This document shows positions 25,561 through 64,000 of a DNA stretch of 64,000 bases, piece after piece. Source of the stretch: Salisapilia sapeloensis CBS 127946 (Eukaryota > Protista > Oomycota); NCBI GenBank assembly GCA_023334545.1, contig JAADVB010000081.1:1-64000 (forward strand), given 5' to 3'. A program made the position numbers and the translations under genes. The notes beneath the pieces were generated by a model, which saw nothing but the letters and a program-made list of their open reading frames with translations, ran no database searches and was not told where the DNA came from. Position 1 is the stretch's first letter; each line of letters begins with the position of its first letter.

Positions 25561-25835
25561 TCTTGTCGCTCTTGAAAATGGTATAGTCAGGCTTCATCCA
25601 TCTGGGTATGAGACGATCCAAGAAAAGGAGGGGGAGGTACTTGATACCTCCGGAATGGATGGACAATCGAGAGAGATGGTGCTAGTACGTTCATGAAAGT
25701 TGTCATGTACTATGGTATCTAATATGGAATTCCAGGTTTCCATAGATATGGGATAAGCAAGGTTTCCGTTGGTGATGGATTGGCAACGAGTAATATGGTA
25801 TACTTGGTTGGACGTTTCTACTTGAACCTTTCGGT

Positions 25836-26745: not shown

Positions 26746-28808
26746 TTAAGCATACATGCTTTCGATTACGTCCTTATGGTTCTCCATGACATTTCGCCGC
26801 TTGAGCTTCAGCGTCGGCGTCATCTCACCGTACGCGAGCGAAAAGTCTCGGTCCAGGATCGCGTACTTGGAGACACGTTGGGCATGGGAAATCGCTCTTT
26901 CATTCGCACGAGCGACACCTTCATCCAAGTACTTTTGAATGTTTGGACATTCCTTTGCCTCTTGGACAGTTGTCGCTGAGCTTCCAACAGATTCACATAC
27001 TCGCAAGGCTGTCGGGTCCAGCTGACTCGTCGGAAGTCCATTCTCATCAGGAACTGTCCGTAGAGTAAGGAGAGCAGAGACAAACTTTCGGCGGTCGCCA
27101 ATCACGACTGCATTCGACAGAATGCTCATTTCGTCCTTGAGGACGTTTTCAATCAGACCTGGATGCATGTTCTCTCCGCCTGCAGTGATAATGAGCTCCT
27201 TAATACGACCAGTGATCTTCACGAAACCGTCTTCATCCACGTCGGCACAGTCACCCATGTGATACCATCCTTCGTCATCTATCGCTGCTTTCGTCTGGTT
27301 CTCATCGTTTAAGTATCCCATCATCACGTTTCGACCGTAGAGGCACAACTCACTCGTGCCTTCCTCCGACTTGACCTTGGATCCGGACAAGGCTGGACCG
27401 GTGGTGCCGATCTTCCAGATACCACGATTACCAGACGTCAGCGGTCCTGTTGCCTCACTCGCGCCCATGACCTCATAGACGGGAATGTCGAGCGCAGCGA
27501 AGAACTCGAGCGTCTCCTTTGCAATGGGAGCAGCAGCGCTGATACATAGCAGAGCTTCGTCCAGACCAAGCGCTTGCTTGATTTTGGATAGCACAAGCGC
27601 ATGGCAGATGCCATAGTCGTACGGATCGCCGTCTTCCTGGCCGTACTGAGAGTACTGGCTACGTCGCCAGCCACTGCTTTTGGCCCAAGCCATCAGAAGG
27701 CTCTTGATCAGACCAGACTCAGCCGCGACAGTCTTGAGCTTCTCTGCCATCTTCTCCCATACTCGAGGCACGCCAATGAAGATTGTAGGCTTCACCTCCT
27801 TTAGCGTGTCCACGAGTGATCCCTTGAGCGCATCCGGCTGGGCAAAGTAGACCTGGCAGCCTGATCGCATCGGCAGGTGGACGTCAGCTGCCAACGCTGC
27901 GATGTGCGAGAGCGGGAGAAAACTGACGATACGATCGACGTTGCTCATGGATCGACCGTAAGGCTCGTAGAAGTGAGGTGCTGTGGATGCCATCGTCCAT
28001 GTGAGGTTGTCGTGGGAGATCATGACGCCCTTGGGATTTCCAGTCGTACCGGATGTGTAGATGAGCGTACAGCACTCTCCAGGATGCTGCATTTCCATTC
28101 GTTCCTGCAACTGCTCGTCCGGTACGTCCTGTCCGACTTGCAAGAACTCTTCGAACGAGTACACAGGAATGGTGGCGTGGATGTCCTTCGGTACCTCAGC
28201 GTTATAGACGACGAGAGCCTTGAGTTGTGGCAAGTCCTGCTGCACCTCCAACAGTTTATCTAGCTGCTTCTGACCGTCGCAAAGGACGACCATCGAGTTG
28301 GAGTGCTCGACAATGTACTTGCAGGCTGGAGGCGTGTTTGTCGCGTAGATACCGGTGCCGATGCCTCCCGCGAAGATCGTGCCGATGTATCCCATGACCC
28401 ATTCAGGCGAGTTGAAGCCAATGATACTTACGCCTTGGAAGCGTTGGATACCGAGATGCAGGAGAGACTTGCCGAACGCTTTGCTCTGGTCGTAGTACTC
28501 TTGGAACGTCATCGAGTGCCTATCATGGTCGACTAAGCTCTAGGTTTCCATAGAAAGAAAATGTAACCTAAGTTACCATTTGTCACCGCGTTTGATATGA
28601 AATGCTGGCTTTGAAGCGTCCTGTTGGAGACGGTCGTGGAAGACCTCGATGACCGTTTGGGCGGGGCGAGCACCTAGCTCACCGTCGCATGGACGGATCT
28701 CCACTTGGCCGTCGATGCGCCAAGTCTGTCGATAAAGGTATGGGTCTATTGGCAATTGTAATTGCAGTCGAAAGAGAAGTTGCGTACACGATAGTCGGAA
28801 GGTGCCAT
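26746..28808 (-). CDS. Long-chain acyl-CoA synthetase (bubblegum/ACSBG-like), 3 exons
   Basis: AMP-binding motif IYTSGTTGNPKG, YHMGD, ITGRIKELIITAGGEN, PTLKLKR; two short 5' introns. Confidence 0.94.
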
Positions 28809-31805: not shown

Positions 31806-33923
31806 TTAATCCACCTCTTCCATCGTGCTCTCCTCTTCCTCGCCCTCAAGCGGAGGCAAGTCGTCCATGTTCTCATCCGCAGCATCATCATCGTCGTCGA
31901 TGCTCAGACCGAGCTTAATAAGACGGTGGATACGGTTCGCGAACGTCGTCGGCTCATCGAGGCTGAAGCCAGACGTCAGGAGCGACGTGTCGTAAAGCAA
32001 CCAGATGAGATCCTTGACCGTCTTGTCGCTCTTGTCGGCCTCGGCCTTTTCACGAAGCGCCTTAATGATCGGATGGAGCGGGTTGATCTCCATCGTCTTC
32101 TTCGACGTCATGTACTGCGACGTGCTGCTGTCACGAAGCGCCTGCGCCTTCATGATACGCTCCATGTTGGCAGACCAGCCGTACTCGCCCGTCACGAGTA
32201 CGCACGGGGACTCGACGATACGGTTCGAGATCTCGACCTTCTCGACCTTGTCGTCCAAGACCTCCTTCATGAGCTTGGTAAGACCCTCCGTAGCGGCCTT
32301 AGCCTCCTCGAACGACTTCTTCTCGTCCTCGGTTTCCTCCATCTGGAGTCCTTCCTTGCTCACCGAGATGAGCTTCTTGCCCTCGTACTCCTTGAGCTGC
32401 TGGACGGCGTATTCATCGATAGCCTCGACCATGAACAGCACCTCGTAGCCCTTCTTCTTGAGCTTCTCAATGAACGGAGACGTCTCGACCGCCTTCTTGG
32501 ATTCACCCGTGACGTAGTAGATGCCAGGCTGGTTCTCCGGCATGCGCGAGATGTAGTCGTCGAGCGACGTCATGTCCTCACCGCTCTTGGTCGAGTGGTA
32601 GCGGAGGAGCTTGGCGATCTTGTTACGGTTCGTCGAGTCCTCGTGGATACCGAGCTTAAGGTTCTTGCTGAAGGCCTCGTAGAACTTCTTGTAGTTCTCC
32701 TCGTCTTCAGCGATTTCAGCGAACATCTCGAGGCACTTCTTGACCAAGTTCTTCTTGATCACACGCAAAATCTTGTTCTGCTGGAGCGTCTCACGCGAAA
32801 TGTTCAACGGCAAGTCCTCAGAGTCGACAACACCCTTGACGAAGGACAAGTACTCAGGCATCAAGTCCTCGCAGTTGTCCATAATGAACACACGACGGAC
32901 GTAAAGCTTGATGTTGTTCAGCTTCTTCTTTCCGCCACCTTCAAACATGTCGAACGGAGCGCGCTTCGGCGTGTAGAGGCACGCCTTGAACTCGAGCTGA
33001 CCTTCAACAGAGAAGTGCTTGACGGCCATGTGCTCCTCCCAGTCGTTCGTGAGCGACTTGTAGAACGAAGCGTACTCGTCGTGCGTGACGTCCTCCGGCT
33101 TGCGCATCCAGATCGGCTTCTGGTCGTTCAGGTGCTGCCAGTCGTGCGTCACCTCCTGGATCTTCTTGGTCTTCTTCTTCTTCTCACCATCTTCGTCCTC
33201 ATCAACTTCCTCAACCTTAGGCTTGTCGTCCTCTTCCTTCTCGTCTTCCTCCTCTTCCTCATCGTCAGTCACCTCCTTCTCTTCGGTCTTCTCGACGTAA
33301 AGACGGATGGGGAAACCAATGAACTCGGAGTGCTTCTTGACGAGGTCCTTGAGCTTGCGCTCTTCAAGGTACTCAAGCATGTCCTCCTTGAGCTTGAAGT
33401 CAATGCGCGTACCACGCGGGATGCGCTCGCCCTGGTCCGGGGTGATCGTGAAGGAGCCACCAGCGGCAGACTCCCACACGTACTGCTCGTCGTCATTGTG
33501 CTTGGAGTGGACGACGACCTTGTCGGCAACAAGGTAACCAGAGTAGAAACCGACACCGAACTGACCGATCATAGAGATATCAGCGCCAGCGGAAAGCGCT
33601 TCCATGAAGGCCTTGGTGCCAGACTTGGCAATCGTACCGAGGTTGTTGATCATGTCGGCCTTGGTCATACCGATACCAGAGTCCTGGATGGACAAAATGC
33701 CGTTGGCCTTGTCCGGGATGATCTTAATCTCGAGGTTCTTGTCAGCGTCAAGGACGGACGGGTCCGTAAGCGACGCGTAACGGATCTTGTCGAGCGCATC
33801 ACTTGAGTTACTGATGATTTCACGGAGGAAAATGTCCTTGTTCGAGTAGAACGTGTTAATGATCAGACTCAAGAGCTGGTTGATGTCCGCCGAAAAGGCG
33901 AAGGTTTCTGCTTCCGCGCTCAT
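31806..33923 (-). CDS. HSP90: Cytosolic HSP90, intronless
   Basis: [32 protein letters not shown]-terminal MEEVD; true ATG at 33923. Confidence 0.99.
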
Positions 33924-34049
33924 GTTTCTCTTGTTTCGGTTGAAAATGCGCGCTTGAGGTGTCCGCGGCAACTATGGAAATGACTGGGTGCAGGTCTTGC
34001 GGATCTTTTATTCGACTTACTTGACTTTTGTATGGGCGACCCTTCCCGC

Positions 34050-34290
34050 CCAATGCGCCACCGATTGGAACTTATCGATGGATCTTTCTCGAACTTGGAT
34101 TCGAGAAGGGTAGGACAGCAAGTATGAGGATGGAGGTTCGCTTGGATGGGGCATTTTAATTATAATAGAATAGTATAAATGGATGCATGGAAAGTGTAGA
34201 CGGAGATGGTGGGGAGGTAGGAGGCGACGAGCTCTTCCGTGGATGGTGGTAGTAGCATGGAAGATTCTAGACGGATGGGAATATTCGAAC
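34050..34290 (-). promoter_or_regulatory. HSP90 upstream CCAAT boxes and heat-shock elements
   Basis: CCAAT 34050-34054, ATTGG 34064-34068; TTCnnGAA dyads 34086-34093 and 34100-34107; GAAnnTTC at 34260 and 34279. Confidence 0.65.
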
Positions 34291-35230
34291 AGTCGCTGAT
34301 ATACAAAAAACAAGTGTATTATTAGTGTAGCCATATCGAGTTTGGAAAGTCAACTTCATCTAAACTTCAACATCGTGTCCGCTGAGAGGATACCTGGAGC
34401 GAAGCTACTCTCTTGTCATCTGAATGGAACATGGATGGCTTTCTATTTATGTCCTGTCTCGTGTATTGGTGCAATTGAGTCTATGTGTGGATGGTTATCA
34501 TTGACAGGGACGTAAGCGCCACGTGTTCACTGTTGCAGCTTTCCGTTTAACAGTCATACCTTCGTATCTCTATCTGAGTGAGTACTACGTATCAGGACAA
34601 TCTTCCTTTGGATCCATTTTCTTGTGCACAAAAAATTGATGCATATAGAAAGTATGCTCACCACTGTTGGGAGGATATACCACTATAAAAATTGATAATG
34701 GCATTGCCACCTTTTCAGATGAATTGCATTCTCTTTCCTTTGACATGAACCTAGGCTTGGTGTACAAGAGATACAAGGATCATTAAAGCCAAGTATAATG
34801 ACGTTTATGGAGATGAAAAATGAACATTCCGTGTGCGCCTTCGGAACTGTGTCATCTCGAACAAGCGATGAATATAGATATCTCTTCCGTTAGACAACCT
34901 GCTATGCCGTGCTTCAAAGTATCTTCTTTCTGAGCTGTACGAAGACATTATAAAATAAGAGATATATATTCTATGATGAAAGCTCTAGCAAGTAAATCGG
35001 TGTTCGTTGAGTAGATAATCGGGTAGTACACAAGGCATTGAAGGCGATATGAAAACAAAAAAGGATAAATTATAAGAGAAATTAATACATGAGTCTTTGA
35101 CGGGTTTCCTACTCTTTTGTCGTTATCCACCTTTTCATTCCTATCTATGCATGTCGTTCGCTTTTCAGCCGACCTTTGATGGGGCATAGTGTCGAGCGTA
35201 TCATCGGAAGTCCTTCAGGTTGAAGTGTCA

Positions 35231-35379
35231 TTCGATTTACTTCCGCTATTGAGCTCTTCGCTGTTTTACTGGGACGGATACAGTGCGCGTTGAACATGGC
35301 GCTCAATTATTCCATCCAGCACGGTACTGTGTCTGTTCCGAAATAATAGAGAAGGGCTCAATAGCGCAAGTAAATCGAA
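35231..35379 (+). ncRNA. Long intergenic RNA hairpin (pre-miRNA / hairpin-RNA-like)
   Basis: 35231-35286 pairs with 35324-35379 in register: 44 Watson-Crick, 7 G:U, 5 mismatches, 37-nt loop; expression not shown. Confidence 0.6.
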
Positions 35380-36153
35380 GAGCTCACCGAGTCTTTCGCG
35401 CGCTTTTTCAAATGTGCACATTTCGAGCACCAGGCATGCTTTGAAGTCTTCTCGAAGATCATTTTCTCCTGTGTGCATGAAAGACGAAGACAGAGATAAA
35501 CCAAGAATATGAATTCGCATCTCCATTGGCAGTAAAGGACACTCGCTTATGCATTCGATATGATGGGAGAAAGTTGTATTGAAGTGTTGTGTTAGGTTTC
35601 CATAGCATGTAGCTACTCCGAATCAACAACTCTCAACGAACACAGAGCTGTCCGATTTGAATATCGAGAATATAATTGCTAAAAGTGAGCCCCCAATCAT
35701 GCCGACTCGGTATTCAGTGCAAACACGGCTTAAAATGTGGATGGTTTTAGACTGTTGAGGATCGCAACCTTCGCCATCGAAGCATTTGCAATCTCTTTGA
35801 TAGCGTATACGATACAATCTTTTCTACGAGCACAAAACTAATTGCCAGCAAAACCTACAGTAGGCCCATCTCAAATGTACATTTACTTGTACAAGTAGAG
35901 TACTAGCTACCTATCAACTTCCTCAAGACATCATTCCATTAAAGAGAGCATGCATAAAGTACAATCAAACGGACATCGTGCCAATATGATCTAAGAAGAC
36001 TGATGCTAGATACAGCAACTCTTAAAAGCTCCTGCTGCAACAACTAGATAGAAAACATATATGAATATAAATTGATCTATTACCAGCATACGCGATTTAA
36101 CTGCAGAGTATCTAGAAGAATGGACTTCTTAACAATCTCACTTTCGTACGAAT

Positions 36154-37593
36154 CTACTTGCGCTCGTCCTTCTCGTATGCGCTTCGCATGAGCAGAAACA
36201 AACTCTTATAAGTTTTCCTTGCGTTTTCATCCCAAGCAGTTCCTGTGCGATGATTGCCGTTCACACGATAGACATGCCATCGTCCTTTGAGGTAGTGACA
36301 ATGGTCTTCCTGGATATCATCTACCGAAGTATGTGAGTTAAAGCGAAGACGACGCTTATGACCAACCGTCGGGACATCGTGTGCAGTTGCTTCTGACTCA
36401 GTCACTGGTGCAAGTGCGTCATCGGAAGCTGCTAAGGCTTCCGGTATCTCTGCTGGCGCAGGGAACCAAGGTCGGTCCATCGACTTGATATTAATAATCC
36501 CATCGTTCGTCTGCCACGCATCCGAGTCAAATCCTTCAAAGAGGTCTGGAAGTGACTTTGTCACGATAGTCATCACCCAGCTTAACCAGAAGAGGAACGA
36601 AAACCAGGAGAAAGAAACATTCTTTGCTCGTCTCCATAGCAGAATGGACAGAAGAAAAGCTCCTTGCAATCGAAACGCCAAGGACATTTCGATCGGTAGT
36701 AGATCCATCAACAATAAGCCGAGGACTACTAGTACCAGCAGCTCTGCCGCTGGGAAATGAGCCGAGTCGTGCGTCGTGGCGATGCTTAGCAAGTAGATCT
36801 TGTCCATTTCAATCAACTTTTTATTTCGTTGAACGCGTTCGTGAGGTAGGATGTCGAAAAACAAGTTCCCTTTGTGCATTCTCCGAGGCATGTTCGGACC
36901 AGCGAGATCAGAGAGCGAATGGTCTCTCCATTGCGTCATCCGCAAGTCGTACATGGAACGAAGGAAAGGAAGTTTTTGGTAAATCTGAAGCCAGCCGATG
37001 ATGACACCACAGAATGCCTGTCCTCGTAATCCCAACGGCGATGTCGTATCGCGGATACCAAAGAGGTATGGAAACGTCGATCCCGTGAGTGGACTCGCGA
37101 TCGTCGTGAGGCTACGCACCCACGAAGCATCTGAGCCGACTTTGAAAAAGTCTTGGCAAAGCAATTGGTAAAGCTCCAACGCAGTGGTGCCACCACAGCT
37201 GTGACCAACGAGGTGTATCGGCCGCTTGCTGCTCCACTTGGCATGCAGTGGATGGTGGAAAGTTGGACCATAGCGATGGTGTCCACGTTCCTTCGAGTGC
37301 TCTTCTCCGTAATCGACCGTACCACCATAGAGTTGGTAGAAGGTCTCGCACGCCCGATCATGGTCTGAAGTGATGATACCACAGTCAACCATGATATGAT
37401 TCGGATTCAATTCTTGCAGAATGTCGTCTGGCCAATACGCCGGACCTCGCCCGTACAGCGGCCTCGAACGCCCATAGCCGAAGGCACCTAGCACAGTCCA
37501 AGCATCTTTAGTAACTCTGGAAAGCTAGGTAGAGAGTCGTAGCCATTGCATACCGTGGATAAGAACGACAGGAAACTTGGTTGTCGCTGACAT
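36154..37593 (-). CDS. Alpha/beta-hydrolase lipase resembling bacterial family I.5/I.6, with a hydrophobic insertion, 2 exons
   Basis: PVVLIHG(A)FGYG via intron 37488-37553, DYGEEHS..HHRYG, HLVGHSCGG nucleophile, NDG acid, probable His in GNHRTG. Confidence 0.88.
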
Positions 37594-63202: not shown

Positions 63203-64000
63203 ATGACAGATACCTTACGTACGAAACTCTTTCTACGAGGCAAGCACGGCATTGAGTCGCTATGGGGACCTCCATCATCCAGTCAAGACGATGTCCAGAT
63301 CGAGAAACATGACTCCTTTGATCTGCCGCAAGCGGATGTGATGGTCTGTTCTCCTGATGGAAGGAACATCGTACTCGTGTCCACGGATAAGGGATTCAGC
63401 GTCCGAGATACACAAACGTAGGCAGTATCAAGTACATCTACTTTCCTACATATTTCTCATCGACCTCTTCTAGTGGACATGTCTCGATCGACATCGAGCA
63501 TAGTGGCATCCAAGCCATGGCGTGGTCTCCCAAAGGTAGCTACTTGATCTCATGGCAACGGCCGGTGAAAGACTCGGACGATGGAAACCTCATTGTATGG
63601 GACGCCGCCACGGGTGCCATCGCCACGCGTTTCCAGCAAAAGACTTATGCTCGCGACGTGCGTCCTCCTATCCACTACCTACCTGCCGTGCCTAACACGT
63701 CTATGATAGAAATGGCCGTCCCTCCAGTGGTCCTCGGACGAAGCCATCTGCGCCCGACTGAGCAACAACGGCGTCGTCGTCTACAACGGCAGTAACCTCG
63801 CCAGTGGTCCCGTCGGCAGCATCAACCAACCCGTACGTCTTCTTCCCTCCCTCTCCGATCCATCTAACACCTTGATAGGGCACGACCGTCTTTAGCGTCG
63901 CGCCTGGGAACGCACCGTACAAACTCGCGCTCTTCGTGCCGGAGAAGAAGGGCAAGCCCGCGAGCGTCCGCGTGTACCAGTTTCCGTCACTCGACACATG
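63203..64000 (+). CDS. EIF2A: Eukaryotic translation initiation factor 2A (partial, runs off the window)
   Basis: WSPKGSYLISWQRP..NLIVW, WPSLQWSSDEAI, YKLALFVPEKKGKPASVRVYQFP. Confidence 0.9.

What the first reader, a model, noticed from the sequence alone, without database searches (positions are those of the whole stretch)
35231..35379. 56-bp intergenic hairpin with plus-strand G:U bias: candidate new oomycete pre-miRNA / hairpin RNA
Sequence: arms 35231-35286 and 35324-35379 pair without indels (44 WC, 7 G:U, mismatches at 35243, 35260, 35266, 35268, 35269; 37-nt loop). G:U versus C:A is 7:1 on the plus strand (one-sided binomial 9/256, about 0.035), whereas neutral decay of a DNA inverted repeat should give them equally. 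It sits in a 2.2-kb gene-free gap, has no target-site duplication, and an INR-like TCATTCC lies at 35135-35141. Known: Phytophthora has Dicer-like/AGO genes but essentially one accepted miRNA family (miR8788), which I do not recognise here. Inference: an RNA-level selected fold, possibly a small-RNA precursor.
Basis: partly seen in the sequence, partly recalled or inferred. Interest (0 to 1): 0.8.

Follow-up and report, generated by a model that had tools for sequence, protein, structure and literature searches.

The report
Fold-back hairpin inside a dispersed repeat
The 56-base-pair hairpin is real and would fold very stably as plus-strand RNA, but it lies inside a non-coding repeat with several transcribed relatives elsewhere in this oomycete genome, and no exact RNA evidence covers it, so it is a candidate hairpin-siRNA source and not a demonstrated new microRNA gene.

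Summary
Arms 35231-35286 and 35324-35379 pair without indels: 44 Watson-Crick pairs, 7 G:U, 1 A:C and 4 transversion mismatches. The + strand folds at -83.3 kcal/mol (z -9.8) and the - strand at -65.4. It is the only inverted repeat of this size in the 64 kb window. It lies in the 2.2 kb gap between HSP90 and a lipase-like gene of an oomycete that is not a close Phytophthora relative (HSP90 92% identical).

New facts:
- A low-abundance, spliced, ORF-less + strand transcript matches this locus exactly from 35411 to 35909, with two GT..AG introns. It begins 32 nt after the hairpin.
- No exact-match RNA contig or indexed RNA word covers the hairpin itself.
- Many RNA contigs at about 90-95% identity lie on 34991-35540, cross both hairpin borders and continue into other sequence. 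Hairpin and flanks therefore belong to a dispersed, transcribed, non-coding repeat family.
- There is no TSD, Rfam match, miR8788 seed, protein homologue, or syntenic hairpin in relatives.

The G:U bias is suggestive only (p about 0.035-0.09). Transcription-linked mutation bias could also produce it.

Verdict: a repeat-derived fold-back and a possible hairpin-siRNA source. A miRNA is unproven. Small-RNA data and the full genome are needed. The scan has noted other ~150-nt fold-backs in this genome, but I could not compare them.

The parts
35231..35286 (+). Left arm of the fold-back (56 nt)
   Evidence: pairs position by position with 35379-35324, 44 WC + 7 G:U out of 56.
35287..35323 (+). Loop (37 nt). 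The MFE fold adds a small inner stem.
35324..35379 (+). Right arm of the fold-back (56 nt)
35231..35254 (+). Outer, best-kept part of the stem. It pairs with 35356-35379 (23 of 24 WC). If the hairpin is diced, this is the likeliest duplex (inference).
   Evidence: Six of the seven G:U pairs and three of the four transversion mismatches lie in the inner part, 35255-35286.
34988..34999 (+). 12-nt exact third copy of the right-arm core (equals 35366-35377), marginally significant
   Evidence: 11 of 500 shuffles score as high.
34991..35540 (.). Stretch on which RNA contigs from other loci (about 88-96% identical, continuing into different sequence) are laid, i.e. a copy of a dispersed transcribed repeat. 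A further short piece lies at 35692-35734.
   Evidence: tables 2, 3, 7, 8. Examples: 35182-35287 within a 1719-nt contig at depth 152; 35334-35434; 35304-35381; 35394-35467 within contigs of 2142 and 621 nt.
35411..35531 (+). Exon of the own-locus + strand non-coding transcript (exact-match contig). The true 5' end is unknown.
   Evidence: record 4 (121 nt, 0 differences). Joint 35531>35596 with GT..AG in two runs.
35532..35595 (+). Intron 1 (64 nt, GT..AG)
   Evidence: table 5. Bases read.
35596..35684 (+). Exon 2
   Evidence: record 6 (0 differences).
35685..35750 (+). Intron 2 (66 nt, GT..AG). It is at least partly retained in one contig of run X3.
   Evidence: table 5 and record 14.
35751..35909 (+). 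Exon 3 (3' end not determined). The spliced RNA has no ORF longer than about 50 codons.
31806..33923 (-). Flanking gene: cytosolic HSP90 (705 aa)
36154..37494 (-). Flanking gene: lipase-like alpha/beta hydrolase. The RNA contig reaches down to 36085.

Best explanation
The hairpin is an imperfect internal inverted repeat of a decayed copy of a dispersed, non-coding, probably transposon-derived repeat, which fills much of the AT-richer gap between HSP90 and the lipase-like gene. The copy lies at or just upstream of the 5' end of a weakly expressed, spliced, non-coding + strand RNA. Shown: the inverted repeat, its strong fold, its non-coding nature, the + strand spliced transcript next to it, and transcribed relatives elsewhere in the genome that share both hairpin borders. 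Inferred: if + strand transcription starts upstream of 35231, the RNA forms a 56-bp stem. That stem is the kind of substrate from which Phytophthora Dicer-like enzymes make heterogeneous 21-nt siRNAs at inverted-repeat loci (PMC3804510). One arm of those siRNAs would be antisense to the expressed relatives. It is not a conserved microRNA gene.
For: IR and fold. Non-coding: no Pfam hit in any gap ORF; the 86-aa minus-strand ORF over the hairpin has 0 hits among 1.84 billion proteins; the spliced + RNA has no ORF. Dispersed family: one search shows many RNA contigs at about 90-95% identity covering 35182-35287, 35207-35261, 35304-35381, 35334-35434 and 35394-35467. They sit inside contigs of up to 2142 nt at depths up to 152 and run on into sequence that is different or only about 60% similar in register. 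The silent stretch 34349-34990 shows the libraries carry no detectable DNA background. Own-locus + strand transcript with two GT..AG introns. No TSD, no Rfam match, no miR8788 seed. The stem has no indels and its outer part is the best kept, as expected for an inverted duplication or TIR-like repeat and not for a long-evolved miRNA stem.
Against: The paralogues were seen only as pieces of RNA contigs. I could not fetch them or search the genome, so copy number, borders and whether other copies also fold back are unknown. None lies in this 64 kb window. One paralogue contig joins 35287 to 35405, and it is not known whether the 117 nt between are missing or merely diverged. The 7:1 G:U excess on the same strand as the neighbouring transcript is what RNA-level selection would give. 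No repeat class could be assigned (no TSD, no coding relic, no tRNA-like part).
Confidence: 0.55

Rival explanations
1. It is a genuine small-RNA precursor (miRNA-like or short hairpin RNA) kept by selection on the + strand RNA fold. It would be transcribed as the first exon of the spliced non-coding RNA and diced, most likely from the near-perfect outer duplex 35231-35254 / 35356-35379.
For: Very stable + strand fold that is 18 kcal/mol better than the - strand. 7 G:U against 1 A:C; the observed configuration is the most +-favouring of 256. An own-locus spliced + strand non-coding transcript lies next to it. The size (149 nt) resembles the 136-140 nt MIR8788 foldbacks, and species-specific miRNA-like RNAs are predicted in many oomycetes (PMC3804510, PMC10080066).
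Against: No exact RNA contig and no sampled RNA word covers the hairpin, although the adjacent exon is assembled at depth about 8. The sequence is multi-copy, which standard miRNA criteria penalise. There are no small-RNA data, no conservation in relatives, no Rfam or miR8788 match and no target in the window. The G:U bias is two-sided p 0.07-0.09 and can arise from transcription-associated mutation asymmetry (my own knowledge, not tested here).
Confidence: 0.22
2. It is a classical MITE: a small non-autonomous DNA transposon whose terminal inverted repeats are the two arms.
For: About 150 nt, non-coding, with the outer ends of the arms best conserved. Related copies exist elsewhere. Other ~150-nt fold-backs were noted in this genome by first-stage readers (unchecked).
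Against: No target-site duplication at any offset outside the stem. Paralogue contigs continue through both hairpin borders into the flanks (35182-35287, 35334-35434), so the arms are not the ends of the repeated unit.
Confidence: 0.1
3. It is a neutral relic of a local inverted duplication with no RNA role. The G:U excess is chance, and the neighbouring transcript is unrelated transcriptional noise.
For: The stem has no indels and the arms are 21% diverged. The hairpin is absent from exact-match RNA. The statistical support for strand bias is marginal.
Against: Both arm-flank junctions and the loop-right-arm junction occur in paralogue contigs. The fold-back therefore seems older than this copy and is not a local event. 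The strand of the bias agrees with the strand of the only local transcript.
Confidence: 0.13

Closest known systems
Phytophthora MIR8788 foldbacks (Fahlgren et al. 2013, PMC3804510)
   Same: Oomycete, intergenic, foldback of similar length (136-140 nt against 149 nt), long stem. The best-paired part of this hairpin lies at the base of the stem, where miR8788 lies in its foldbacks.
   Different: No sequence relation: the conserved 15-nt miR8788 seed has no match within 3 mismatches in the hairpin. MIR8788 is conserved across species and has sequenced miRNA/miRNA* pairs and validated AAAP targets. Here there are no small-RNA data, no conservation, and the sequence is multi-copy.
Phytophthora inverted-repeat hairpin siRNA loci, e.g. 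pin-IR2758 (PMC3804510)
   Same: An imperfect inverted repeat predicted to give a hairpin RNA. That paper proposes such loci give heterogeneous 21-nt small RNAs without an RNA-dependent RNA polymerase. This is the mechanism I consider most likely if the hairpin is transcribed.
   Different: pin-IR2758 is 714 nt and has small-RNA and northern evidence. This one is 149 nt, lies in a different oomycete lineage, and has no small-RNA evidence.
MITEs / fold-back transposon relics
   Same: Small, non-coding, arms best kept at the outer ends, related copies elsewhere in the genome.
   Different: No TSD. The family similarity runs through the hairpin borders, so the arms are internal, not terminal.
Young plant MIRNA genes born by inverted duplication of expressed sequences (Allen et al. 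2004 model; from my own knowledge)
   Same: A long, indel-free stem whose arms resemble expressed sequences elsewhere in the genome, so its small RNAs would match those transcripts.
   Different: The relatives here appear non-coding. Neither dicing nor targeting is shown.

Membership tests
microRNA gene (criteria as applied in PMC3804510) | Single-stranded hairpin fold with few and symmetric mismatches in the candidate duplex | tested here: met
   no indels, and 23 of 24 WC pairs in the outer duplex.
microRNA gene (criteria as applied in PMC3804510) | Dominant 20-22 nt read with a complementary star read giving 2-nt 3' overhangs | not testable with these tools
   No small-RNA run was listed. 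The reads tool offered only assembled contigs of ordinary RNA runs.
microRNA gene (criteria as applied in PMC3804510) | At least 95% of small RNAs from one strand | not testable with these tools
   No small-RNA data.
microRNA gene (criteria as applied in PMC3804510) | Transcription of the precursor from this locus | tested here: inconclusive
   the exact-match + strand spliced RNA is seen only from 35411 onward. All contigs over 35231-35379 carry 3-9 differences and belong to other loci; no RNA run holds a sampled word of the hairpin.
microRNA gene (criteria as applied in PMC3804510) | Not a repeat or transposon locus, with few genomic matches (ten or fewer) | tested here: inconclusive
   One search shows several distinct related transcribed copies at 90-95% identity. 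The exact copy number is unknown without the genome.
MIR8788 family | Conserved first 15 nt of the guide strand | tested here: not met
   no match with up to 3 mismatches in 35231-35379. The sequence was taken from the supplement of PMC3804510.
MITE | Target-site duplication flanking the terminal inverted repeats | tested here: not met
   no direct repeat of 2-10 nt at offsets 0 to +8 outside the stem.
MITE | Inverted repeats are the termini of the repeated unit | tested here: not met
   paralogue contigs run from the flank into the arm on both sides (35182-35287; 35334-35434).
MITE | Multiple dispersed copies | tested here: met
   indirectly from RNA contigs. None lies in this window.
Any Rfam family (including snoRNA and miRNA models) | Score at or above the gathering threshold | tested here: not met
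   0 matches in the window; the best hit is 19.9 bits against a threshold of 48.
tRNA-derived SINE | tRNA-like head | tested here: not met
   no tRNA-like gene in 33900-36200.

The most novel reading that the evidence does not exclude
In an oomycete lineage outside Phytophthora, a spliced long non-coding RNA carries in its first exon a repeat-derived 56-bp hairpin that is diced into 21-nt small RNAs. These small RNAs would act in trans on the much more abundant transcripts of its own repeat family. That would be a proto-microRNA caught at birth, with the plus-strand G:U excess as the first trace of selection on the RNA fold.
Probability: 0.15. Interest if true: 0.55.

Novelty: new member of a known kind. 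Interest (0 to 1): 0.3.

Why it matters
Oomycetes have one well-supported microRNA family plus many inverted-repeat loci that yield 21-nt small RNAs. Species-specific miRNA-like RNAs are predicted in many species (PMC3804510, PMC10080066). A validated hairpin small-RNA locus in a poorly studied oomycete lineage, born from a repeat and hosted in a spliced non-coding RNA, would be a useful example of how such loci arise. As it stands, the locus is an ordinary repeat-derived fold-back with some suggestive features. Its main value is as a defined candidate to check once small-RNA data for this organism exist.

Tried and rejected
- Protein-coding reading. No Pfam hit in 12 gap ORFs. The 86-aa minus-strand ORF spanning the hairpin has no relative among 1.84 billion proteins. 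The spliced + RNA has no ORF. The paralogue differences I could place show no 3-nt periodicity (by eye).
- Known RNA families. None matches.
- miR8788. Absent.
- tRNA-SINE and tandem repeats. None.
- Other copies in the window. None by blastn or tblastx.
- Metagenome scan with a degenerate arm pattern. 0 hits.
- The scan's own index by sequence. Blank.
- Orthologous comparison. The organism's HSP90 is not on record. The nearest HSP90s are only 90-92% identical. In Phytophthora fragariae and one Logan assembly the gene upstream of HSP90 is different (a WW-domain gene and an endosulfine gene). Those gaps hold no comparable inverted repeat and no similarity to this gap. Covariation therefore could not be tested.
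- Target search with all 21-mers of the stem. Within the window there is only one overlapping pair of chance-level same-strand hits at 4 mismatches, and no antisense hits.
- Bacterial-type promoter/terminator scan. Not meaningful for a eukaryote.
- Assembly artefact. Rejected, because the arms are 21% diverged and a DNA run holds 75% of the words of the region.

Full report
**1. The observation**

Arms 35231-35286 and 35324-35379 pair in register without indels. There are 44 Watson-Crick pairs, 7 G:U pairs, one A:C pair (35269) and four transversion mismatches (35243, 35260, 35266, 35268), with a 37-nt loop.

The repeat finder reports the same pair, and it is by far the longest short-spacer inverted repeat in the 64 kb window. 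Folded as RNA, 35221-35389 gives -83.3 kcal/mol on the + strand (z -9.8) and -65.4 on the - strand (z -6.2). No shuffle reaches either value. The stem also survives in a 402-nt context.

The outer 24 bp are nearly perfect (23 WC). Six of the seven G:U pairs and three of the four transversion mismatches lie in the inner part.

**2. The G:U bias**

Under strand-symmetric mutation, each of the eight transition mismatches is equally likely to read G:U or A:C on a given strand. A 7:1 split has p = 0.035 one-sided and 0.07 if either strand would have been reported.

I enumerated all 256 configurations and folded both strands:
- The observed configuration is the single most +-favouring one.
- 24 of 256 have an absolute energy difference at least as large, because the rest of the hairpin slightly favours the - strand.

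The bias is suggestive but not compelling. An excess of C>T and A>G changes on the non-template strand of a transcribed region would give the same pattern without any selection on the fold. That point rests on my own knowledge of transcription-associated mutational asymmetry and was not tested here.

**3. Context**

The gap runs from the HSP90 start codon (33923, - strand) to the stop of a lipase-like alpha/beta-hydrolase gene (36154, - strand). It is AT-richer than the genes: about 0.39-0.45 G+C against about 0.52-0.56 in HSP90 and 0.48-0.54 in the lipase-like gene.

HSP90 is 92% identical to Phytophthora, 90% to Pythium/Globisporangium and 87% to Saprolegnia. The organism is therefore an oomycete but not a close relative of any genome in the protein database. 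Its own HSP90 is not on record.

**4. Coding potential**

I found none:
- No gap ORF hits Pfam.
- The 86-aa minus-strand ORF that spans the loop and right arm has no relative among 1.84 billion representative proteins.

**5. RNA evidence (Logan contigs of four RNA runs of the same organism)**

The stretch 34349-34990 has zero depth in all four runs, so DNA background is negligible.

There are two kinds of contig.

(a) Exact-match contigs define a + strand transcript:
- 35411-35531, then a 64-nt GT..AG intron.
- 35596-35684, then a 66-nt GT..AG intron.
- 35751-35909.
- Depth is about 4-9, and intron 2 is at least partly retained in one run.
- I checked the splice dinucleotides in the sequence. 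They are canonical only on the + strand.
- The spliced RNA has no ORF, so it is a non-coding RNA.
- Its assembled start, 35411, is 32 nt beyond the right arm.

(b) Every contig lying on the hairpin carries differences (3-9 per 46-101 nt) and runs on into other sequence. Examples:
- 35182-35287, inside a 1719-nt contig at depth 152.
- 35207-35260 and 35216-35261.
- 35304-35381.
- 35334-35434.
- 35352-35420.
- 35394-35467, inside contigs of 2142, 621, 130 and 106 nt.
- Further pieces at about 35031-35097 and 35692-35734.

Where loose ends are printed, they are often still about 60-75% identical to the window in register. This is what diverged copies of one repeat look like.

These are therefore transcripts from other loci that carry related sequence. 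They cross both borders of the hairpin and the loop/right-arm junction. The fold-back is an internal part of a larger repeated unit of at least about 290 nt, and probably 550-750 nt.

One paralogue contig joins 35287 to 35405, and another joins 35471 to 35691. It is not known whether the intervening parts are absent or just diverged.

In agreement with (b), no RNA run holds any of the 14 sampled 31-mers of 35215-35395. RNA runs do hold 6-18% of the words of 34900-35700.

**6. What it is not**

- No Rfam family matches, either in permissive mode over the gap or at gathering thresholds over the whole window.
- The conserved miR8788 seed, taken from the supplement of PMC3804510, has no match in the hairpin.
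- There is no tRNA-like part.
- There is no TSD at any offset outside the stem. Because the family similarity runs through the stem borders, it is not a classical MITE.
- There is no other copy in the window. A 12-nt exact third copy of the right-arm core lies at 34988-34999 (p about 0.02).
- No 21-mer of the stem has a convincing target in the window.
- It is not an assembly artefact: the arms are 21% diverged and a DNA run holds 75% of the region's words.

**7. Relatives**

Orthologous comparison is not possible with the data at hand. In Phytophthora fragariae and in a Logan assembly carrying a 90%-identical HSP90, the upstream neighbour is a different gene. Those gaps have neither a comparable inverted repeat nor any similarity to this gap. 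A metagenome scan with a degenerate arm pattern found nothing.

**8. Interpretation**

The best-supported reading (about 0.55) is a fold-back inside a decayed copy of a dispersed, transcribed, non-coding repeat. It sits at or just upstream of the 5' end of a weak spliced non-coding + strand RNA.

In Phytophthora, 21-nt small RNAs come mainly from inverted repeats, with processing that ranges from precise (MIR8788) to heterogeneous (pin-IR2758) (PMC3804510). Species-specific miRNA-like RNAs have been predicted in Pythium, Lagenidium and Phytophthora (PMC10080066).

If + strand transcription does pass through 35231-35379, the most likely mechanism is Dicer-like cleavage of the 56-bp stem into siRNAs. 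One arm of those siRNAs would be antisense to the abundant paralogue transcripts. Transcription through the hairpin, dicing and targeting are all inferred, not shown. The absence of exact-match RNA over the hairpin, beside an assembled neighbouring exon, counts against it. A very stable stem or rapid processing could still hide it.

A true, selected miRNA-like precursor remains possible (about 0.2). A classical MITE (about 0.1) and an inert local duplication relic (about 0.13) are less likely.

**9. Earlier notes of this scan**

First-stage readers listed several other ~150-nt fold-backs elsewhere in this genome, and a follow-up described a common non-coding repeat with hairpin-forming inverted repeats. 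I could not see their sequences. They are leads for a family-level comparison, not support.

**10. Verdict**

The pre-miRNA interpretation is only partly supported and is weakened by multi-copy status and by the lack of exact RNA coverage. Novelty is modest: a new member of a known kind (inverted-repeat or hairpin loci in oomycetes). Interest is about 0.3. The decisive data are small-RNA reads, raw stranded reads or 5' RACE, and a whole-genome copy census.

Noticed in passing
window 35411-35909 (+): A previously unnoted spliced non-coding RNA in the 'dark' gap. It has three exons, two short GT..AG introns (64 and 66 nt), depth about 4-9 and no ORF. Intron 2 is at least partly retained in one run. 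It points towards the 3' end of the lipase-like gene on the opposite strand.
   Followed up: partly
window 33923-34309 (-): The HSP90 RNA contigs end at 33952 in two runs but extend to 34294-34309 in the two runs of another sample, at the contigs' full mean word depth (a single value per contig, so no measure of local coverage). This suggests an alternative upstream start or a leader roughly 370-390 nt long in that condition.
   Followed up: no
window 25734-25745, 28542-28553, 35594-35605 (+); near copy at 63579-63590 (-): The 12-mer AGGTTTCCATAG occurs three times exactly (expected 0.14). The copy at 35594 spans the 3' splice site of intron 1 of the non-coding RNA. The copies at 25734 and 28542 share wider similarity, including a second GGTTTCC-like motif about 20 nt downstream.
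   Followed up: partly
window 33659-33689: In all four RNA runs a different transcript shares just this 31-nt piece of the HSP90 coding region and diverges on both sides. It is probably another HSP90-family gene.
   Followed up: no
L001 4414-6001; L002 5216-6001: The gene upstream of HSP90 differs among oomycetes: a lipase-like gene here, a WW-domain gene in Phytophthora fragariae, and an endosulfine-domain gene in a Logan assembly. Synteny on this side of HSP90 is not conserved.
   Followed up: partly
window 35692-35734: A 43-nt piece inside intron 2 of the non-coding RNA matches a high-depth transcript from elsewhere (run X5). One contig joins 35471 directly to 35691. The repeat family therefore seems to exist in forms with and without the 219 nt in between.
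   Followed up: no
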